IMG/VR virus record: IMGVR_UViG_3300027749_002876
Coordinates: 186,001 to 250,000 of that record
Direction: 5' to 3' (one strand)
DNA: 64,000 nt
In this document: positions 51,278 to 63,628 of the stretch, piece after piece
Position numbering within the stretch: position 1 is the stretch's first letter
Layout: the number at the start of each line of letters is the position of its first letter
Program-made: the position numbers and the translations under genes
Notes under the pieces: model-generated
The model's input: the letters and a program-made list of their open reading frames with translations, nothing else
Database searches by the model: none
Told to the model about the DNA's origin: nothing

Positions 51278-52720
51278 TTATTTCTTTAAACTATTAAGCA
51301 TTGCCTTCAATTTTGACCCCTGCACATCTGCTATAATACGCTTGTTTTCAGGCTCAAGTATCTCTCCTGTAGCTTGGTCTATGATAGGTTCAGTTGATAA
51401 TAACACAGATTGTGGCTTTAAGCTACTCATAATATCATTAGCACTGGGTTTGGGAGTATAACTATTCTCATTGTCAGGATCGCTATCGCTGATACGCATT
51501 GTCTCAATATCATAATCTAAGTCAATCTTTTGACCTACACCAGTTGAACTACGTGACTTCATACACTGAATTTGATACTTTCCACGCTCTCGCATACTGC
51601 GACTTGTAAAGATACCAAACACGTTATCTGCTGTATTAATCTTACTGATACCACCAGCAATATGACTATGGTCAAACTCAATCTCATCAACTGCACTACG
51701 ATTTAACTGACTTGCAGTAACCATCAATATGCCTAATTCTTTTGCTAAGTTACGCAATTCTTCTGCTACATACTTGTCTTTGATAAACTGGTCGTTAGGA
51801 TTAACTTTAACAGAAACTGGCATAACCAAATCTAAGTAGTCAACCATTACAAAGTCAATCTTAATACCTGTTTGAATTTGTACTTCTTTTAAATAAGCAC
51901 GAATGTCATTTACGTTACTTTGTGCAGGTAATCCTTTAACACGATACTGCCCAGACTTCTTTCCGACCATCTTAACTTTAAGACTAGTAGTATCAATGTC
52001 TTTACGAATTGCTTTAGTTCCCATCATAGTCAACATAGCATCTGTTCTTAATGATGTTAGTTCTTCACTCAGTTCTAGTGTTACATATACACCACTCATT
52101 CCCTGTTTCAACCAGTTCAAAGCAATATTCATCATAACCAAACTTTTACCTGAACCACTGCCACCTGCAAAGATGTTGAGTTCACCACGACTAAATCCAC
52201 CATATAAGATACGATCCATTTGTGGCCAGCCTGTACTTACTTGTCCACCATTGTTAAAGTATTTGTTGATACGTGCTGCCGGGTCATAGAAGTAATCAGT
52301 TCCCATGTCTTTTTGTAAACTAATTTGTACCGCATCTTTAATCAATTTCTCAACAGGATCAAAGTCACCCTTCTCAAGTAAGTCTGCCGCTTTAAGAATA
52401 GCACGTTCTAATTCTTGTCGTTTAGTAAATGATTCAAACTCATCCAAGAACCAATCAAATTGATTAGGACTGAAGTTGGGTATAATATCAATGTCTTGCC
52501 CTGTAATAGCTTTGATTTGTGCAGGATCGGGCAAAATACTATATTTTGTTGAATGCTCTTTGTACAAATTTGCAACCGGGCGCAATGACCTATCAAAATT
52601 ATCACTGTTCAATATGTTCATAACTCTGGTATAGAGTTCTGCTTCAGTAATCATTATACGCAAAAATATCTTTTGCACTTCTATACCATACTCTTTTTTA
52701 TTTTCGTAATCTTTTTTCAA
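51278..52720 (-). CDS. gp41: replicative DnaB-family helicase (gp41-like); start uncertain
   Basis: GGSGSGKS, TLEL, VDYLD, TASQLNR, KSRSS. Confidence 0.92.
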   Translation of the reverse strand: MKKDYENKKEYGIEVQKIFLRIMITEAELYTRVMNILNSDNFDRSLRPVANLYKEHSTKYSILPDPAQIKAITGQDIDIIPNFSPNQFDWFLDEFESFTKRQELERAILKAADLLEKGDFDPVEKLIKDAVQISLQKDMGTDYFYDPAARINKYFNNGGQVSTGWPQMDRILYGGFSRGELNIFAGGSGSGKSLVMMNIALNWLKQGMSGVYVTLELSEELTSLRTDAMLTMMGTKAIRKDIDTTSLKVKMVGKKSGQYRVKGLPAQSNVNDIRAYLKEVQIQTGIKIDFVMVDYLDLVMPVSVKVNPNDQFIKDKYVAEELRNLAKELGILMVTASQLNRSAVDEIEFDHSHIAGGISKINTADNVFGIFTSRSMRERGKYQIQCMKSRSSTGVGQKIDLDYDIETMRISDSDPDNENSYTPKPSANDIMSSLKPQSVLLSTEPIIDQATGEILEPENKRIIADVQGSKLKAMLNSLKK

Positions 52721-53675
52721 TTTTTTTCCTTTGTAGTTCTATTTTGATTTTGCTTGCCGTTGCACTACTCAATATACTGAGCAATGTAGGCAACTTACCA
52801 TACTTAACTACCGCGTCATTCACATCTTTAACATCATCTTCCCAATTGGGAATACTAATACTATAACCTAATTCTAATGCTCTATCACATGTTTCTAAAC
52901 CAGTTTCATCTCTATCGGGAATAAAAATAATTTGTTTATTTAATTGTGCTAGTAATTGTACTTGAGTATCATTGATTGTATTATGTGTTAACGCACAAGC
53001 ATTTAAACTTAATGCATCAAAAATACCTTCAACTAACAAACATACTTCCCAATTAGGTTTCTGAAAGTCATAACCAAATACATAGCCAGGTTGTTGCTCG
53101 TTAATATATTTTGGGATTTTGTTATCTAAGAATCTACTTGTATGACCTACAATTTTGTTCTTGTAAGTATAGGGGATAATAATTCTGTTTGACTGTCTGC
53201 CAGTGTCATTAGGTGTAACTAAGAACGGGTAGTCATTATAATTTATCAGTCTTGCAGACAAGTAATCAACGTATACTTTGTGTAATGGATTACTTACATC
53301 TAATATTTCAGCTTCAGGGAGTTTATGTTCTTCAAATTTTATTTTTGTTTTTTGTTTCTTAAGATGAGCAAAATCTAACAGATCCCTATATTGCAGACTT
53401 TCTAAACTCCATCGTTGAATTTGAATATCATCTATACCACACCATTTTAATAAACTTTTAGTAATCTCACTAATTTGTTTACCTAAGGTGAACCCACATT
53501 TAAACCCACAATTGAAACAGGCATATGACCAGTTTTCTCCGTCTTTTTTAACACCACCTCTACCTCTAGTGTCAGATTTGTGCCCACGATGATGACAGCA
53601 TATAGCATTAAAGCTATGCCATCCACCTTGTGTTATTTTTTTCTTTCCGGGAATTACTGACAGTATATCAAACAT
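52698..53675 (-). CDS. gp61: DNA primase (gp61-like)
   Basis: N-terminal zinc ribbon (CC...CFNC), RIIIP, TOPRIM EGIFD, DRDETG, KDVND. Confidence 0.88.
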   Translation of the reverse strand: MFDILSVIPGKKKITQGGWHSFNAICCHHRGHKSDTRGRGGVKKDGENWSYACFNCGFKCGFTLGKQISEITKSLLKWCGIDDIQIQRWSLESLQYRDLLDFAHLKKQKTKIKFEEHKLPEAEILDVSNPLHKVYVDYLSARLINYNDYPFLVTPNDTGRQSNRIIIPYTYKNKIVGHTSRFLDNKIPKYINEQQPGYVFGYDFQKPNWEVCLLVEGIFDALSLNACALTHNTINDTQVQLLAQLNKQIIFIPDRDETGLETCDRALELGYSISIPNWEDDVKDVNDAVVKYGKLPTLLSILSSATASKIKIELQRKKIEKRLRK

Positions 53676-54558: not shown

Positions 54559-54939
54559 ATGATTCAAAACGAATTTTTTAACAAACTATCTCAAAATCAC
54601 CCGTTCATAACCATATGTTCATACGCCAACCAAGATTATGTTGGAATAGTACAAAATAGAGATGATATAGTCACCACTATATATGACTATGGAGCTATTA
54701 TTGATAATATAGCTAGAGAAAAATTCTTAGAATTAGGTGATATTTGGTGGTGGGAAAGTAATAGACTTATCCCTATTAACCTGTTCTTAAAAGACGAATG
54801 GACTATCTTTAAACCATATCTTAGAACATTCAATAACAAAAGCTTAACAGTCATACACGGCCCAACGTGTAGTATGTCTGAACTAAACAAACGTAGAAGT
54901 AAACGCCGTAGTATTACCCTTGTTAAACGGATTTTGTAA
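54559..54939 (+). CDS. hypothetical late protein
   Basis: 126 aa; GATAAATA at 54530-54537. Confidence 0.75.
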   Translation: MIQNEFFNKLSQNHPFITICSYANQDYVGIVQNRDDIVTTIYDYGAIIDNIAREKFLELGDIWWWESNRLIPINLFLKDEWTIFKPYLRTFNNKSLTVIHGPTCSMSELNKRRSKRRSITLVKRIL

Positions 54940-55495
54940 GTAAGTTCATATGTACTACTACTAGTTGGCTATAGGATAAGCTGTGACTTTTTTTGAAACT
55001 ATACCCATCGTCTCCTTTGTCCCAGATAGTCATACTGACTTCTTTCCAACTCTTACCAATTAAATGTCTTTTAGCTGGGCGAATCAATGCTAAAAACATT
55101 GCTAATCTAGGAATACTATCAATAGGTTCAGGCATTTTTTTAATAGATTGATAATGATTTCCTAAATGAATTAGTTTCTCAACAAATTCTCTGTCATTTA
55201 ACTTAGACCAATCAGGGTCTGCCATCAATTCAACTAAATGTTTTTCATTTTGTACTTGTGAGTATACATGAACATTCAATAAATCTAATTTAAAATATCC
55301 ACGACTTTCTGCCACAACATAATCAATTGCTGCCATATCATTTACAGGATCATAAGGAATATCAGTAACATATACACCAGTAGCATGTTTACGCATAGGT
55401 TTAGCATTACGCATAGCGGCAGGCGTGTGTTTAATAAGTTGTAATAACTTGTCTCTATCACCAAAATCAATGTCAATGTCTGATTCTATTCTCAT
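54923..55495 (-). CDS. dnaE: DnaE-like minimal catalytic fragment
   Basis: DIDIDF, HATGVYV, YFKLDLL, LALIRP, GYSFKKSH..Y in canonical order within 190 aa. Confidence 0.85.
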   Translation of the reverse strand: MRIESDIDIDFGDRDKLLQLIKHTPAAMRNAKPMRKHATGVYVTDIPYDPVNDMAAIDYVVAESRGYFKLDLLNVHVYSQVQNEKHLVELMADPDWSKLNDREFVEKLIHLGNHYQSIKKMPEPIDSIPRLAMFLALIRPAKRHLIGKSWKEVSMTIWDKGDDGYSFKKSHSLSYSQLVVVHMNLLTKSV

Positions 55496-56046
55496 CTTGG
55501 AGGTGCTACCAATTCTGCTTTCATTAATTTAGTATACGCTTTTTGTACAACAATAGCTTGTCTTTCGGCATCTTCTACTGCTTTGTGACTAGTCACGTGA
55601 CCACCGTCTTTAAGACTTACGCCGGTTATCTCGTACAAGGTACGTGTATCTCTAACGGTGTAGAAAGGCCAAGGGATTCGCATTTCAAGGTTTCGCCAGG
55701 CCGACTCTGCCACAACCACATCGAATGATGCACCGTTACTCCAAACAGCACGGCGATTCCAACAAAACTTATAAAGTATTTCCATACATTCTCTAAACGG
55801 AATTCTGCCGTGTTCTCCCATAGCCTCTTCAAGTGCTGCCGGGCTTTGCTCACTCCACCATCGTAATGTATCTTCATTTATACTCCTATTATAAATTTCT
55901 GTTTGTTCTTCAATCGTTGGTCGTAACTCTAATCTTTCAACAACACCACTACCTTTAGGATCAAATCTTACTGCGCCAATGGTTAGTATAACACAATCAG
56001 GACTTGTGTCAAGTGTTTCCATATCAATCATTATATCTTGTGCCAT
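55492..56046 (-). CDS. DEDDh 3'-5' exonuclease
   Basis: IDMETL, WSNGASFD, RDTRT, HKAVEDA. Confidence 0.88.
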   Translation of the reverse strand: MAQDIMIDMETLDTSPDCVILTIGAVRFDPKGSGVVERLELRPTIEEQTEIYNRSINEDTLRWWSEQSPAALEEAMGEHGRIPFRECMEILYKFCWNRRAVWSNGASFDVVVAESAWRNLEMRIPWPFYTVRDTRTLYEITGVSLKDGGHVTSHKAVEDAERQAIVVQKAYTKLMKAELVAPPR

Positions 56047-56047
56047 A

Positions 56048-56398
56048 TTATGCCTGTAATGTTTTCCAAATATATTTCTTCTCTAAGTAATCTTGTAGCT
56101 TCAATGCTTCATCTTCACTATTGAATGCCACACCTTTAATCTCATACATATCTTCTAGGTATCTAGCATATTCTCCATTAATGTCTTGTGCCCAAGTGTT
56201 TAATGTAATCCACATAATATCAAGTTCGTCTTTTACAATCGACATGCTAATACCAACTTCATCACTACCGATATCTTCAAATAGTACATCTAACAGTTTT
56301 TTCTTAATAGCAAACGTTTGAATGTTACCCCATTTAGGCCATGATACTAGGAATTTACCTTTTTGTAAAGAGGTTATGGGAAAAGGTTTATTGTTCAT
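56048..56398 (-). CDS. hypothetical protein (possible divergent array member)
   Basis: VAFNSEDEA motif; ATGA coupling. Confidence 0.65.
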   Translation of the reverse strand: MNNKPFPITSLQKGKFLVSWPKWGNIQTFAIKKKLLDVLFEDIGSDEVGISMSIVKDELDIMWITLNTWAQDINGEYARYLEDMYEIKGVAFNSEDEALKLQDYLEKKYIWKTLQA

Positions 56399-56661
56399 TG
56401 GAATTTTAATAAAAATATTAGGTACTTCTTTTCGTCAACAATCTCATAACCATCTGTTATATTACCATTAACTATGTTCATCTTTAAGCCATATTGTCCA
56501 GTAAGATAATCTTCAAAATCATATGCGTCAAACTCTTTGTTCTGTGCCATATATTCTTTACGAACTTTCTTCAATGCTTCCCAATAGTTCCAACGATTTC
56601 TACGTTGGTCTATACTTGGATCATCGTCATCGTAGTCCTGTATGTGAGGTATTGATGCCAT
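56395..56661 (-). CDS. small hypothetical protein, 'LRW'-type family (start revised to MASIPH)
   Basis: ends EIVDEKKYLIFLLKFQ; TGATG overlap. Confidence 0.7.
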   Translation of the reverse strand: MASIPHIQDYDDDDPSIDQRRNRWNYWEALKKVRKEYMAQNKEFDAYDFEDYLTGQYGLKMNIVNGNITDGYEIVDEKKYLIFLLKFQ

Positions 56662-56897
56662 CAACTCCACCTTAACGTGAACAAAATGTAATCTTTTTCA
56701 TATCTAAACTTGAAACTGATTAGGTCATCGTCAGTTATACCCCATCTACAATGTCTTTCGTGTTTACCAATATTGGTTTCTAACCATTTAACTATTTCGT
56801 TATATTTGTCAAGATGTTTAGCATGTACTGAACATTCATGCCAACCGGGTTTGGTGTTTTCCCATCCAGCATCATAGTCATAATGTTCATATATCAT
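56661..56897 (-). CDS. small hypothetical protein, 'LRW' family (start likely MIYEHY)
   Basis: ends FKFRYEKDYILFTLRWS; ATGA overlap. Confidence 0.7.
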   Translation of the reverse strand: MIYEHYDYDAGWENTKPGWHECSVHAKHLDKYNEIVKWLETNIGKHERHCRWGITDDDLISFKFRYEKDYILFTLRWS

Positions 56898-57106
56898 TGC
56901 CATCTCAGCGAAAACCAAAAAGCATCTTTTTCATTTCTAAAATGCCAGCTATAACTTTTAGGATCATCTCTTCCTACCCAAAAACATGTCCAATTGCCTG
57001 TCTTTCTACCAACAGCAAACCATCGTTCTCCTATGTTATCTCTGCACCATTCTTCTACTTCGTATCCAAGTTTCTTAGTAATTACAGTGTATGGCAATTC
57101 TTTCAT
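56894..57106 (-). CDS. small hypothetical protein, 'LRW' family (start revised to MKELPY)
   Basis: ends WHFRNEKDAFWFSLRWQ; ATGA overlap. Confidence 0.7.
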   Translation of the reverse strand: MKELPYTVITKKLGYEVEEWCRDNIGERWFAVGRKTGNWTCFWVGRDDPKSYSWHFRNEKDAFWFSLRWQ

Positions 57107-57321
57107 CCCCACCTCAACATAAAATAACTTGCATTACTATCATTGTAAAAAGTAAAAACTGTATGTTGTTCCATAATAGGTTCAGAACTAAAATCATCCC
57201 ACATTTCTTTGTAATAAGCAAAGTCAAAATCAACTCCTTGAACCCAACCCATTTTTCTTACCTCTGATACTATATCTAAAACTCTAGTTACGTTTATTTC
57301 CTTGATAATTATATTAGCCAC
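57103..57321 (-). CDS. small hypothetical protein, 'LRW' family
   Basis: ends FTFYNDSNASYFMLRWG; GTG start. Confidence 0.7.
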   Translation of the reverse strand: MANIIIKEINVTRVLDIVSEVRKMGWVQGVDFDFAYYKEMWDDFSSEPIMEQHTVFTFYNDSNASYFMLRWG

Positions 57322-57511
57322 AGATCAACTCAAATAATATAGCATCACGCTCATCCTTAAAGTAAAAATCCATATAATCTTCAGTCACATGTGTTTCATA
57401 TTTGTCTCCGGGTAAACCAAACTTTTCTACCGCTATTGCACAAGTTTCATTCCATATAGGATGTTTGTGATGTGTTTGCCATGTTATACGAACTCTAGTA
57501 CCCGCCGGCAT
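57314..57511 (-). CDS. small hypothetical protein, 'LRW'-type family
   Basis: ends FYFKDERDAILFELICG. Confidence 0.7.
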   Translation of the reverse strand: MPAGTRVRITWQTHHKHPIWNETCAIAVEKFGLPGDKYETHVTEDYMDFYFKDERDAILFELICG

Positions 57512-58217
57512 TCAATAATTCCTTAACTTGTTTCACATTATCTGTTTCACGGTTAAACTTAATCTTCCATAGTTCTGGATTAATATAATCAATGACCATC
57601 TTTACATGTGATTCATTTAAACTATCTAAGAACTTTACACCACTGTCACTTTGATATAACATCCATGGACTAATCTTACCATTGGTAATACTATGACATA
57701 TCTTGTTAATATTACCATAACACAAATAGTCTTTAGCTAGTATCCCTTCTTTTTCTGCTAAATCTATGGTAGTTTGGACACTACGTGCAATCGCATCAAA
57801 CGGATCTTCACTACGTAAATACTCAATTAAATATTTTGTATATACAGTATCAGTTGCCCATGTGTCAACTTTAATTTGATTCTTTAATAACCAATCTACA
57901 TATCTACTAACGTTGATTGCATTAATGTTTGCACAATGACTACCAAACTTAACAAAGGCTGTATAATAAGCACTGCGAATAAATTCTTCGTATGTTTTTG
58001 CTTTTTTAGTTGAAGTATTCTTCTTATAAAATTGTATCCAAGCTTGAAACCCAATACGATTACCCTGCAATTCTTTGTTCATCCAACGTTGTTTATTTTC
58101 ACATAGGTGTTTAGCCATAGTAGATTCACGTAGGAACTCTCTATTGCAAAAATCACAACCATACTTGATTGTGTTATCAGTTGCCTCTGTCTTTTTCGTA
58201 TTGAGTGATATCTTCAT
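57495..58217 (-). CDS. hypothetical protein with N-terminal zinc-finger-like motif
   Basis: YGCDFCNREFLRESTMAKHLC. Confidence 0.7.
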   Translation of the reverse strand: MKISLNTKKTEATDNTIKYGCDFCNREFLRESTMAKHLCENKQRWMNKELQGNRIGFQAWIQFYKKNTSTKKAKTYEEFIRSAYYTAFVKFGSHCANINAINVSRYVDWLLKNQIKVDTWATDTVYTKYLIEYLRSEDPFDAIARSVQTTIDLAEKEGILAKDYLCYGNINKICHSITNGKISPWMLYQSDSGVKFLDSLNESHVKMVIDYINPELWKIKFNRETDNVKQVKELLNAGGY

Positions 58218-59273: not shown

Positions 59274-59302
59274 ATTATAACACTTTCTTATCTGTATGTC
59301 AA
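59274..59302 (-). promoter_or_regulatory. consensus sigma70 promoter TTGACA-N17-TATAAT, 6 nt before ATG
   Basis: exact consensus; no SD. Confidence 0.85.
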
Positions 59303-60739
59303 CTTTTCTAAGTCAAACGGGTAGTTTGCTTCTTTATAAAAAGCCTTACGTTGGGTTAAATGTCTTTTGGCAAACTTACAACTGCTTGTTACATCCCAAA
59401 TTTGTACAAAGTCTTTATCTTCTGCTTTACGAATGCCTCGACCGATGCTTTGGATAACACGGACGAAGGATTTTCCAGGTTCAATGAGAACCAGATTAAA
59501 AATCCTAGGTATGTTGATACCAACAGCGGCGACACCATAAGTCGCAACAATAATTTTATTTGTACTGGTTGCAATTTCATCATATTCTTCTTTCCTTTCA
59601 ACCATATTAGTAGCACCACTCACAAATACACTATCGGGTAATCTACTAACAATTTCTTTACCTGCATTAACTCTATCAACTAGAATCAATACATTGCCTG
59701 TTTCTTTAATCTTTAATATTAGTTGTGCAATAGCATCTAGTCTATTTGTATCCTCAAGCAAGTGTTTCAACTCACTTTGGTAATTACTAAACTCTACATC
59801 ATCTTTTAATTGAACAATATTAACGTGACATTGTGCTAGTACACCTTGATCCTGTAACTCACTTGCACTTAGTTTACTGATAACAGGACCTAAACTAACA
59901 AACAATGATTGTGCTTCAAACTTAGCTTTAGGGATAGTTCCGGTCAATCCCCAGCGAATCGGAACCTTAGCAAAGGCCCCAGTCAGTAATGTCTTTAGTG
60001 CATCTGCTTTGGCCATGTGAACCTCATCTACCATGACACAAACAACACCTTCAATGAAGTCCATAATATCTGCTTCACCTGCTTTTGTTTTCTTAAGCAT
60101 ATTGTTAAGACTCTGCCAAGTACAAATAGTATGTGTTTTATTGTACTCTTTGCGATCACCAAAGTATACACCAACATCTAATCCAAGATTAATGTAATCT
60201 GCTTCTGTTTGTGTTACTAAACTCTTGTTCGGAACGATAACAATACTACGACCATATTGTTCTATACTATAACTTAGTGCGGCAGTCATCAATGTTTTAC
60301 CCGCACCTGTAGCAATCTCTTGTAGTGATTGCGGGTTCTTTAGAAAGTTATTAACAATAGTAATTTGATAATCACGTAGCTCTACGGGGGTGCCTTCTTT
60401 GGGATGACCTTTAGGCCAGTTCTTATGAGCGAACGTTGATTCGGACACTTCAGCGAATTCAAAGGTTGTTGTATAATCCCTAGTATCATCCAACTCAATA
60501 TCATATCCTGCTCTGTCTAATACGGGAAGTATTTCTTCCAATAGATTAATATATGTACTACCAGCAAGACTGAAATAACTTACTTTGCCATTCCATCTTC
60601 CTAGTCGTACTGCAGGTAGATATCGTGCACCGGGAACTTCATACTCAAACATTTTCATTAGTGCTTTACGCTCTGCTAATTCAAGACCTTCTATCTTTAC
60701 ATTAACTTCATCTTTAACGATTATTTTACATTGTTTCAT
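59288..60739 (-). CDS. uvsW: SF2 DNA helicase UvsW
   Basis: LRDYQ, ATGAGKT, DEVH, GLTGT, QSIGRGIR. Confidence 0.92.
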   Translation of the reverse strand: MKQCKIIVKDEVNVKIEGLELAERKALMKMFEYEVPGARYLPAVRLGRWNGKVSYFSLAGSTYINLLEEILPVLDRAGYDIELDDTRDYTTTFEFAEVSESTFAHKNWPKGHPKEGTPVELRDYQITIVNNFLKNPQSLQEIATGAGKTLMTAALSYSIEQYGRSIVIVPNKSLVTQTEADYINLGLDVGVYFGDRKEYNKTHTICTWQSLNNMLKKTKAGEADIMDFIEGVVCVMVDEVHMAKADALKTLLTGAFAKVPIRWGLTGTIPKAKFEAQSLFVSLGPVISKLSASELQDQGVLAQCHVNIVQLKDDVEFSNYQSELKHLLEDTNRLDAIAQLILKIKETGNVLILVDRVNAGKEIVSRLPDSVFVSGATNMVERKEEYDEIATSTNKIIVATYGVAAVGINIPRIFNLVLIEPGKSFVRVIQSIGRGIRKAEDKDFVQIWDVTSSCKFAKRHLTQRKAFYKEANYPFDLEKLTYR

Positions 60740-62884: not shown

Positions 62885-62913
62885 ATTGTATCACGTTATC
62901 CATTTATTGTCAA
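62885..62913 (-). promoter_or_regulatory. early sigma70 promoter TTGACA-N17-TACAAT
   Basis: shares AAATTTGACAATAAATGG with the next two promoters. Confidence 0.85.
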
Positions 62914-63334: not shown

Positions 63335-63363
63335 ATTATAGCAGAAAGCCCATTTATTGTCAA
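63335..63363 (-). promoter_or_regulatory. early sigma70 promoter TTGACA-N17-TATAAT
   Basis: exact consensus with extended TG. Confidence 0.9.
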
Positions 63364-63599: not shown

Positions 63600-63628
63600 A
63601 TTATATAGCCAAATCCATTTATTGTCAA
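63600..63628 (-). promoter_or_regulatory. early sigma70 promoter TTGACA-N17-TATAAT
   Basis: exact consensus. Confidence 0.9.

What the first reader, a model, noticed from the sequence alone, without database searches (positions are those of the whole stretch)
56048..57511. Tandem array of small divergent paralogs whose conserved end can double as the next gene's SD
Five or six ORFs of 65-116 aa share only a terminal F.F..E.DA..F.L(R/K)(W/F)-like motif: FKDERDAILFEL, FYNDSNASYFMLRW, FRNEKDAFWFSLRW, FRYEKDYILFTLRW, IVDEKKYLIFLLKF. All overlap by ATGA, TGATG or a few nt. In two junctions the L-R-W codons read GAGGTGG or AAGGTGGAG just before the next ATG. Inference: a self-coupling, expandable family with a common fold and variable surfaces, such as anti-defence or host-takeover adaptors. 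It sits inside the replication operon.
Basis: partly seen in the sequence, partly recalled or inferred. Interest (0 to 1): 0.6.

Follow-up and report, generated by a model that had tools for sequence, protein, structure and literature searches.

The report
Expandable small-protein cassette array in phage
A giant freshwater phage carries, inside its DNA-replication operon, a row of small genes from one large unnamed protein family; their conserved last codons also spell the ribosome-binding site of the next gene, related phages hold 3 to 19 such genes at the same spot, and what the proteins do is still unknown.

Summary
Six small minus-strand genes fill 56048-57511 between a 240-aa gene and a 3'-5' exonuclease, and their junctions are as described. 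Four of them (65, 72, 70 and 80 aa) are homologous by leave-one-cluster-out profile tests. The 88-aa gene is a probable divergent member. The 116-aa gene is not a detectable member.

They share a roughly 50-residue C-terminal domain, not only a tail. It is absent from Pfam, NCBIfam and PHROGs and has no solved relative. It matches 3195 protein clusters in a 1.8-billion-protein library, and the structure-library matches I could check are viral.

The window is a fragment of a freshwater jumbo phage. In 66 related loci the same slot shows 22 gene orders. It holds 3 to about 19 family genes, plus occasional enzymes. The 70-aa gene is a precise cassette gained or lost exactly at the stop/start overlap.

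The Leu-Arg-Trp end is written TTG AGG TGG NNA TGA. AGG is used in 11 of 14 Arg ends in one relative, against 5.7% genome-wide. This gives the next gene a GAGGTGG Shine-Dalgarno site.

Function is untested. Early-expressed, fast-turnover binding modules for host or defence factors is the best guess.

The parts
57314..57511 (-). s65: family member of 65 aa (cluster c4), first gene of the array. Its last residues have drifted from L-R-W in this lineage.
   Evidence: Leave-one-out profile E 2e-5, best orthologue 1.6e-9. Present in 52 of 66 related loci. Some orthologues still end in L-R-W-G.
57103..57321 (-). s72a: divergent family member of 72 aa (cluster c0), GTG start. It ends TTG AGG TGG GGA TGA.
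   Evidence: Leave-one-out E 7.5e-4, above all shuffled and genomic decoys. Present in 63 of 66 loci. Its end GAGGTGGGGATGA is kept whatever gene follows: c1, c5, c15, c16 or c24.
57109..57115 (-). GAGGTGG inside the Leu-Arg-Trp codons of s72a. Probable Shine-Dalgarno site for s72b, whose ATG at 57106-57104 overlaps the TGA stop.
   Evidence: Read from the sequence. It is the only GAGGTG on the coding strand of the 91-kb genome that is followed by an ATG within 12 nt. Conserved in relatives.
56894..57106 (-). s72b: family member of 70 aa from ATG 57106 (cluster c15). An accessory cassette.
   Evidence: Leave-one-out E 3e-8. Among the 66 loci it is found only in the window and two identical contigs; there is also an orthologue in L076. 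It is cleanly absent in L023 and replaced by cluster c5 in L012, with the same junctions on both sides.
56661..56903 (-). s85: family member of 80 aa from ATG 56903, or 78 aa from 56897 (cluster c1). It ends TTA AGG TGG AGT TGA.
   Evidence: Leave-one-out E 2e-10. There are 23 orthologue clusters in metagenomes. AF2 model has pLDDT 70.6 and a strand-helix-strand-strand-helix order.
56665..56673 (-). AAGGTGGAG inside the Leu-Arg-Trp-Ser codons of s85. Probable Shine-Dalgarno site for s91 (ATG 56661-56659, TGATG overlap).
   Evidence: Read from the sequence. In 17 of 18 orthologue junction variants the Arg codon stays AGG while neighbouring synonymous sites vary. The s91 start keeps an RGGTGGA-like element whichever family gene precedes it.
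56395..56661 (-). s91: 88 aa from ATG 56661 (cluster c2). Probable divergent member and the most conserved small gene of the slot.
   Evidence: hhalign against the family profile gives P 1.7e-4, probability 50%, in register over both halves of the domain. A paralogue in the L076 array links to it at E 2e-5. HMM tests are not significant. Median identity among relatives is 91%.
56048..56398 (-). s116: conserved 116-aa neighbour (cluster c3). Not a detectable family member.
   Evidence: HMM E 0.03-1.2. hhalign probability 0.5%. AF2 model with pLDDT 79 is a larger alpha/beta domain with no significant fold match. Present in 58 of 66 loci.
59274..59302 (-). Perfect sigma-70-type promoter (TTGACA, 17 nt, TG-TATAAT) in the 20-nt gap after the helicase gene. 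Likely start of the transcript that carries the array.
   Evidence: 12 of 12 consensus match. No intergenic gap or strong terminator lies between it and the array. Function as a promoter is inferred.
57495..58217 (-). 240-aa gene (phrog_11058, unknown function). Upstream anchor of the variable slot.
   Evidence: PHROG E 1.6e-58. Used as the anchor in 66 loci.
55492..56046 (-). Rv2179c-like 3'-5' exonuclease of 184 aa. Downstream anchor of the variable slot.
   Evidence: Pfam PF16473 E 2.5e-31 and phrog_255 exonuclease. There are 419 related stretches in IMG/VR.

Best explanation
The region is a hyperplastic slot inside the early replication operon of a freshwater jumbo phage with a T4-type core. 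The slot is filled by cassettes of one large, so far unnamed family of small phage proteins. Each cassette encodes a variable N-terminal part plus a C-terminal domain of about 50 residues, and the protein ends at L-R-W plus one residue.

In this phage lineage the last codons are written TTG AGG TGG NNA TGA. Every cassette therefore carries, in its own coding end, a GAGGTGG Shine-Dalgarno site and an ATGA stop/start overlap for whatever gene comes next. The genes are thus translated as a coupled chain without intergenic DNA.

The 3' ends are similar over about 50 nt and recur every 200-700 nt. Cassettes are gained, lost and swapped exactly at these junctions, which lets the array grow or shrink (3 to about 19 members) without breaking expression.

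Shown here: the family, the domain, the junction anatomy, the codon bias, the cassette-precise polymorphism and the copy-number range.

Inferred:
- The SD-like strings work in the unknown host.
- Recombination between the repeated ends is the mechanism of gain and loss.
- The proteins are early-expressed, non-enzymatic binding modules with a conserved aromatic core and variable surface that act on host or defence factors. I give that functional reading about 0.35.
For: Family and domain:
- Leave-one-cluster-out HMM tests support four members; iterative recruitment pulled in no genomic decoy.
- The 115-sequence alignment has near-invariant W, G, W, F, D, F, L, W.
- 3195 clusters match at E <= 0.001, and in about 140 of the 150 listed the domain ends at the C-terminus.
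- The AF2 model is a strand-helix-strand-strand-helix.
- BFVD matches are all uncharacterised phage proteins.

Slot variability:
- 66 loci, slot length 1.2-4.3 kb, 22 gene orders.
- 16 profile matches, or 19 genes by motif, lie in one array in L076.
- s72b is a clean indel relative to L023 and is swapped for c5 in L012, with identical junctions.
- Same-cluster duplicates are only 32-44% identical, so these are old cassettes that get reshuffled.

Coupling:
- AGG is 5.7% of Arg codons genome-wide, but 2 of 3 at this position here (P 0.0095) and 11 of 14 in L076 (P 7e-12). In L076 it is always preceded by TTG and mostly followed by NNATGA.
- The Arg codon is frozen while neighbouring synonymous sites vary.
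- 35% of the phage's genes have an SD core upstream, against 6.5% background.
- Intragenic SD motifs matter for reinitiation at ATGA and TGATG overlaps (PMC6728339).

Repeated ends:
- 13 copies of a 50-nt gene-end repeat in L076.
- A 49-nt pair at 71% identity in the window.

Early operon:
- A perfect sigma-70 promoter at 59302-59274.
- Replication genes on both sides.
Against: - There is no expression or translation data. No RNA run holds the region, and the host and its anti-SD are unknown.
- Several junctions lack an SD. The s91 to s116 junction has none. Ends that precede the c1 gene use AGA or CGA. So coupling does not always need the motif.
- Recombination at the repeated ends is inferred from breakpoints only. 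The same pattern could arise from selection keeping only in-frame, coupled products.
- Five genes (c4, c0, c1, c2, c3) are present in 52-63 of 66 loci, and c2 is 91% conserved. That looks more like core function than an arms race.
- The fold match is generic: best Z 6.2 to an ACT domain, within the tool's stated background. It gives no functional clue.
Confidence: 0.7

Rival explanations
1. The small proteins are fixed accessory subunits of the phage replication machinery. They would be clamp, helicase or exonuclease partners, co-translated with it in set ratios. The variation among relatives would be mostly neutral.
For: The genes lie between helicase, exonuclease, polymerase piece, primase and DnaB genes. 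Five slot genes are near-universal in this phage group, and s91 is 91% conserved. Tightly coupled overlapping pairs often encode complex subunits (title of PMC10666635).
Against: The number of family genes in the slot ranges from 3 to about 19. Unrelated enzymes (ROK, radical SAM, glycosyltransferase) drop into the same slot. Family members are also scattered elsewhere: 8 in the 524-kb relative and 34 in Phosso, many of them next to tRNA and other non-replication genes.
Confidence: 0.2
2. The shared tail is convergent. Selection for an SD plus overlap at the DNA level forces unrelated small genes to end in Leu-Arg-Trp, so there is no true protein family.
For: TTGAGGTGG is an almost ideal SD, and the codon bias shows DNA-level selection.
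Against: Similarity extends over about 50 residues, including the distant W-C-x-x-x-F-G helix and a central Trp. Phosso members keep F-K-L-R-W written CTC CGC TGG and similar, often without an overlapping downstream gene. Leave-one-out profiles find the members at E down to 2e-10.
Confidence: 0.04
3. The GAGGTGG strings are incidental or serve something other than translation initiation. Examples would be a recombination hotspot, or a ribosome pause at a rare AGG codon before termination.
For: The repeated ends do coincide with cassette breakpoints. AGG is a rare codon here. Phosso carries a tRNA-Arg(CCU) gene directly beside a family member.
Against: Spacing to the next ATG is 5-8 nt from the GAGG core, the range typical of SD sites. 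The s91 start keeps an RGGTGGA element even when a different family gene precedes it. That ties the motif to the downstream start rather than to the upstream protein.
Confidence: 0.1
4. The array is ordinary tandem duplication and divergence in place. Differences among relatives would reflect only differential loss, with no cassette exchange.
For: All members are in one orientation at one locus, and the paralogues are ancient.
Against: Gene order differs: c5 lies before c1 in some loci and after it in others. c15 and c5 occupy the same position with identical flanks. Loci with at least 93% identical exonuclease differ in cassette content. All of this needs insertion or exchange as well as loss.
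Confidence: 0.15

Closest known systems
Hyperplastic regions of T4-type phages, shuffled through PeSL regulatory cassettes (Arbiol et al. 2010, PMC2839356; Comeau et al. 2014, PMC4122927)
   Same: Clusters of small, mostly unknown, non-essential genes sit between conserved core genes of T4-type genomes. Insertions, deletions and replacements fall at repeated boundary elements that also carry expression signals.
   Different: PeSLs are intergenic sigma-70 promoters plus stem-loop terminators. Here there is no intergenic DNA. The boundary element lies inside the coding end (Leu-Arg-Trp codons, stop and start) and is a translational signal, not a transcriptional one. The cassettes belong to a single protein family. 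No stem-loops or promoters lie between cassettes.
Translational coupling at ATGA and TGATG overlaps with an SD inside the upstream gene (Huber et al. 2019, PMC6728339)
   Same: The junction types are the same, and an intragenic SD lies upstream of the downstream start.
   Different: Here the SD coincides with the most conserved residues of a gene family and is repeated at each unit of an array. It behaves as a portable part of a cassette rather than a feature of one gene pair.
Lineage-specific expansions of small domains in jumbo phages, for example about 35 zinc-ribbon copies in Bacillus phage G (Iyer et al. 2021, PMC7824862)
   Same: A small domain is multiplied to tens of copies in giant phage genomes, with function guessed only.
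   Different: This is a different domain. A term search of that survey for expansions, paralogues and Atu_ph07 brought up no such family. Here the copies form one tightly coupled array whose size varies among close relatives.
Integron gene-cassette arrays
   Same: A single upstream promoter precedes a row of promoterless cassettes of variable number and order.
   Different: No integrase is seen nearby, and no attC-like inverted repeats were found. The cassettes overlap instead of being separated by recombination sites.
ACT, RRM or ferredoxin-like alpha/beta sandwich folds
   Same: The predicted strand-helix-strand-strand-helix order superposes on an ACT domain (5v0s_B: Z 6.2, rmsd 1.9 A over 54 residues).
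   Different: The Z score is within the background the tool reports for models without relatives. The last strand of the classic fold is missing. There is no sequence or ligand-site similarity.

Membership tests
Unnamed 'WC-FG ...
   s85 E 2e-10, s72b 3e-8, s65 2e-5, s72a 7.5e-4. Best shuffled sequence 0.01-0.04.
Unnamed 'WC-FG ...
   HMM E 0.2-1.8. hhalign gives P 1.7e-4, probability 50%, in register. There is a paralogue link through L076 gene 5.
Unnamed 'WC-FG ...
   HMM E 0.03-1.2. hhalign probability 0.5%. The predicted domain is different and larger.
Unnamed 'WC-FG ...
   True for s72a, s72b and s85, and for about 140 of the 150 best library hits. s65 has lost the Arg-Trp in this lineage, but some of its orthologues keep it.
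PeSL-type cassettes of T4 hyperplastic regions | Intergenic sigma-70 promoter plus stem-loop terminator between cassettes | tested here: not met
   The genes overlap or abut. There is no terminator-like hairpin or strong promoter between cassettes.
Integron cassette array | attC-type imperfect inverted repeats at cassette ends, and an integrase | tested here: not met
   No such inverted repeats in 55900-57700. No integrase among the neighbours scanned.
Any curated protein family (Pfam-A, NCBIfam, PHROGs v4) or solved structure | Match of any of 26 to 115 family members to a library model or a PDB sequence | tested here: not met
   Nothing beyond chance-level or N-terminal-extension hits.
Anti-defence or host-takeover proteins | Demonstrated inhibition or binding of a host or defence factor | not testable with these tools
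   The evidence is circumstantial only: small size, probable early promoter, high turnover.

The most novel reading that the evidence does not exclude
The conserved coding end (about 50 nt, finishing TTG AGG TGG NNA TGA) is a self-contained 'plug' with three roles. It closes the protein fold. It supplies the ribosome-binding site and restart point for the next gene. It also serves as the homology patch for recombinase-free gain, loss and exchange of cassettes. On this reading, jumbo phages keep an integron-like, freely expandable library of one binding-domain family, whose members are diversified counter-measures against host defences or host takeover factors.
Probability: 0.25. Interest if true: 0.75.

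Novelty: new variant of a known kind. Interest (0 to 1): 0.6.

Why it matters
It defines a large family of small phage proteins that the standard libraries do not hold: thousands of sequence clusters, and tens of copies in some jumbo phages.

It also shows a compact way to build an expandable gene array. The expression signal for the next gene is written into the conserved last codons of the previous one, so units can be added or removed without intergenic DNA.

Two things become directly testable. The first is how hyperplastic regions turn over when no PeSL-like elements are present. The second is what this family does. Two cultured carriers exist for that work: Sinorhizobium phage Phosso and Agrobacterium phage Atu_ph07.

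If the members prove to be anti-defence or takeover factors, the profile would flag many candidates at once.

Tried and rejected
- **DNA search of the phage collection.** blastn of the region found nothing.
- **tblastn with library members.** Two consensus-like library members found nothing in 50,697 phage records. Short divergent queries are the likely cause, because the profile does find Phosso and Atu_ph07.
- **T4-like cyanophages.** I recalled this motif from T4-like cyanophages, but that was not borne out. The profile found no match in T4, P-SSM2 or E. coli phage PBECO4 at E <= 0.01.
- **Fold searches of the s85 model.** Foldseek against the PDB gave a best E of 0.37. The exhaustive aligner gave a best Z of 6.2 to an ACT domain, within background. 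The ESM Atlas gave only viral hypothetical clusters and one DnaJ-fused bacterial cluster, which I did not pursue.
- **s116 model.** No meaningful match in BFVD or the PDB.
- **Atlas feature search for s91.** It returned only its own kind.
- **N-terminal extensions as captured gene pieces.** I tested whether the extensions of clusters c5 and c17 are pieces of other phage genes. There was no match in the 524-kb and 352-kb relatives.
- **Homing endonucleases as the cause of the hotspot.** The larger inserts are ROK, radical-SAM and glycosyltransferase genes, not nucleases.
- **Read laying.** It used contigs only. It confirms that the exact array occurs in runs of several freshwater studies but says nothing about RNA. 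A single 1613-nt 'skip' joint was seen at low likeness in one contig and was not trusted.
- **Complex prediction.** No job was sent, because I make no specific binding claim.
Full report
**What is there**

On the minus strand, six small ORFs fill the whole space between a 240-aa gene (57495-58217, phrog_11058) and an Rv2179c-like 3'-5' exonuclease (55492-56046):
- s65: 57314-57511.
- s72a: 57103-57321.
- s72b: 56894-57112.
- s85: 56661-56918.
- s91: 56395-56670.
- s116: 56048-56398.

The quoted C-terminal strings and the junctions are exact. From orthologues and overlaps the likely starts are:
- s72a: GTG at 57321.
- s72b: ATG at 57106 (ATGA overlap).
- s85: ATG at 56903 or 56897.
- s91: ATG at 56661 (TGATG overlap).
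- s116: ATG at 56398 (ATGA overlap).

GAGGTGG lies at 57109-57115 and AAGGTGGAG at 56665-56673. Their (G)AGG cores sit 5 and 8 nt before the next ATG.

**Setting**

The window belongs to a 91-kb viral record that CheckV rates as 22% complete. A 524-kb IMG/VR contig rated complete carries the identical array. The UvsW-like helicase at 59288-60739 is closest to jumbo phages: Phosso at 56%, Atu_ph07 at 51%, and E. coli phages of about 350 kb at 49%.

The neighbours are replication genes:
- helicase;
- exonuclease;
- a DNA-polymerase piece at 54923-55495;
- primase at 52698-53675;
- DnaB-like helicase at 51278-52720.

A perfect sigma-70-type promoter lies at 59302-59274 on the minus strand. No gap or strong terminator lies between it and the array. 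The exact sequence occurs in freshwater metagenomes from several studies. No RNA run holds it.

**Is the similarity real?**

By pairwise comparison only s72b and s85 are significant. Pfam and PHROGs give nothing for any of the six.

I fetched related loci through an s85 orthologue and through the exonuclease. In 66 of them both anchors are present. I clustered the genes lying between the anchors.

An iterative profile search was started from the s85 orthologues. It successively drew in the clusters of s65, s72b and s72a and about ten further clusters. It drew in no decoy from the 840 six-frame ORFs of the genome.

A cleaner test left out the tested gene and all its orthologues (Z = 1000). The results were:
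- s85: E 2e-10.
- s72b: E 3e-8.
- s65: E 2e-5.
- s72a: E 7.5e-4.
- The best of 1150 shuffled sequences reached E 0.01-0.04.
- s91 (E 0.2-1.8) and s116 (E 0.03-1.2) were not significant.

Profile-profile comparison places s91 in register over the whole domain (P 1.7e-4, probability 50%). A paralogue in a related array links to s91 at E 2e-5. s116 gets a probability of 0.5%.

The tally is therefore four members, one probable member and one non-member. A fifth clear-looking member lies outside the window at G000:C1:87845-88108 on the minus strand.

**The domain**

The alignments (A1 with 26 sequences, A2 with 115) show a C-terminal unit of about 50 residues. It has a helix with W-C/L-x-x-x-F/I-G, a conserved Trp, a strand F-x-F, and a final helix D-x-x-x-F-x-L-R-W followed by one residue. 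W, G, W, F, D, F, L and W are each at least 90% conserved.

AlphaFold2 with A1 gives a strand-helix-strand-strand-helix model with pLDDT 70.6. The conserved residues are mostly aromatic, so I infer that they form the core and that the surfaces vary.

Fold searches gave:
- Foldseek finds no solved relative (best E 0.37).
- The exhaustive aligner's best match is an ACT domain at Z 6.2, within the stated background.
- BFVD and the ESM Atlas return only uncharacterised proteins of uncultured tailed phages.

None of 115 members matches Pfam, NCBIfam or PHROGs beyond chance. No PDB sequence matches.

A profile search of 1.84 billion representative proteins finds 3195 clusters at E <= 0.001. The 150 best listed are 58-161 aa long, and in most of them the domain ends at the C-terminus. 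The clusters I looked up are named 'hypothetical protein' or carry no name at all.

Copy numbers in whole genomes or contigs:
- Sinorhizobium phage Phosso has 34 copies, several of them in tandem groups, and Atu_ph07 has 4. Every CDS in the Phosso stretches I inspected is annotated as hypothetical.
- The 524-kb relative has 8.
- A 352-kb relative has 18.
- T4, P-SSM2 and PBECO4 have none at E <= 0.01.

**An expandable slot**

Among the 66 loci, whose exonuclease is 62-100% identical to the window's (median 88%), the slot measures 1.2 to 4.3 kb and shows 22 gene orders.

A backbone of s65, s72a, s85, s91 and s116 types occurs in 52-63 of the 66 loci. Other family clusters come and go. So do a ROK-family gene, radical-SAM genes and a small glycosyltransferase.

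In the 352-kb relative (L076), 24 small genes precede the exonuclease. Nineteen carry the motif, and 16 match the profile at E <= 0.01.

s72b is a cassette. It is cleanly absent from L023 and replaced by another family gene in L012. The same sequence lies at both junctions, GAGGTGGGGATGA upstream and AGATGGCAATGATAT downstream.

Members of one cluster within one array are only 32-44% identical. The cassettes are therefore old, and the differences reflect gain, loss and reordering rather than fresh duplication.

At the DNA level the gene ends form a dispersed direct repeat. L076 has 13 copies of 50 nt at 60-70% identity. The window has a 49-nt pair at 71% identity.

**The coding end as Shine-Dalgarno site**

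AGG makes up 5.7% of Arg codons in this genome, and TTG makes up 20% of Leu codons.

At the Arg of the L-R-W end:
- The window uses AGG in 2 of 3 cases (P 0.0095).
- L076 uses it in 11 of 14 cases (P 7e-12). There it is always preceded by TTG and mostly followed by NNA TGA with the next ATG in the overlap.

Among s85 orthologues the Arg codon stays AGG in 17 of 18 junction variants, while neighbouring synonymous sites vary. The s72a end is kept whichever of five different genes follows it. The s91 start keeps an RGGTGGA element whichever family gene precedes it.

About a third of the phage's genes have an SD core upstream, against 6.5% in random windows. Published work shows that such intragenic SD motifs usually matter for reinitiation at ATGA and TGATG overlaps (PMC6728339).

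The protein motif does not depend on this. In Phosso the same residues are written CTC CGC TGG and similar, often without an overlapping downstream gene. The SD role is therefore a secondary use of a structurally constrained end, made possible by choosing AGG and TTG.

Not every junction uses it. The s91 to s116 junction has no SD. Ends that precede the s85-type gene mostly use AGA or CGA.

**Interpretation**

The best-supported picture is a hyperplastic slot in a probably early replication operon. It is filled with cassettes of one small-protein family that bring their own translational coupling signal.

It resembles the PeSL-bounded cassettes of T4-type hyperplastic regions (PMC2839356, PMC4122927). 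The difference is that the boundary element here is coding and translational, and the cassettes are paralogues.

It also resembles the lineage-specific expansions noted in jumbo phages (PMC7824862). A term search of that survey brought up no such family.

Function remains open. Small size, probable early expression, an aromatic core with variable remainder, multiplicity and fast turnover fit binding modules aimed at host or defence factors. I put this at about 0.35. The near-universal backbone genes, and s91's conservation, leave room for a replication-linked role (about 0.2).

Nothing here tests expression, binding or recombination directly. The experiments and computations listed under next steps would do so.

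Noticed in passing
whole window; G000:C1: The 91-kb record is rated only 22% complete by CheckV. An identical copy of the region lies in a 524-kb contig rated complete, and relatives measure 180-352 kb. The source is therefore a freshwater jumbo phage whose helicase is nearest to Phosso and Atu_ph07.
   Followed up: partly
G000:C1:87845-88108 (minus strand), outside the window; L087:14943-15206: A further family member of 88 aa, ending in L-K-W-S, lies far from the array. The 524-kb relative has three more dispersed copies, near 80.6, 456.7 and 497.0 kb.
   Followed up: partly
window 63600-63628, 63335-63363, 59274-59302, 62885-62913 (minus strand): There are three perfect and one 11-of-12 sigma-70 consensus promoters within 4.4 kb, all pointing with the genes. 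This suggests an early region read by the host polymerase.
   Followed up: no
window 54923-55495 and 55492-56046 (minus strand): The exonuclease and a 190-aa 'DNA polymerase' piece (phrog_11778) are separate overlapping genes. PBECO4 annotates a separate 'DNA polymerase exonuclease subunit' beside its helicase, so the polymerase appears to be split in this phage group.
   Followed up: no
L012:5165-6016, L016:1567-3087, L066:368-1624, L039:4088-4744: In relatives the same slot also takes up larger genes: a ROK-family protein, B12-binding radical-SAM enzymes and a small DXD glycosyltransferase. The slot is a general accessory-gene hotspot, not only a home for the family.
   Followed up: partly
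library proteins P0081, P0146, P0063, P0069: Two family members carry an N-terminal stretch resembling the N-terminal region of the T4 gp23 major capsid protein (Pfam Gp23, E 3e-4). Two others hold two family domains in tandem.
   Followed up: no
L096:822-1190 (Sinorhizobium phage Phosso 2821-3189): A tRNA-Arg(CCU) gene, which reads AGG, lies directly upstream of the best-scoring Phosso family member. The window and the rest of its 91-kb record hold no tRNA gene.
   Followed up: no
window 56890-57210: Metagenome contigs identical to the window repeatedly end near 56931-56942 and 57086-57206, close to the two junctions of the s72b cassette. This is as expected if co-existing strains differ there.
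   Followed up: no
window 54559-54939 (plus strand): A lone opposite-strand gene of 126 aa (phrog_11637) is kept, at the same size and orientation, in all related loci examined, just beyond the polymerase piece.
   Followed up: no
L001:6466-6969: A more distant relative carries a peptide deformylase gene a little downstream of the slot.
   Followed up: no
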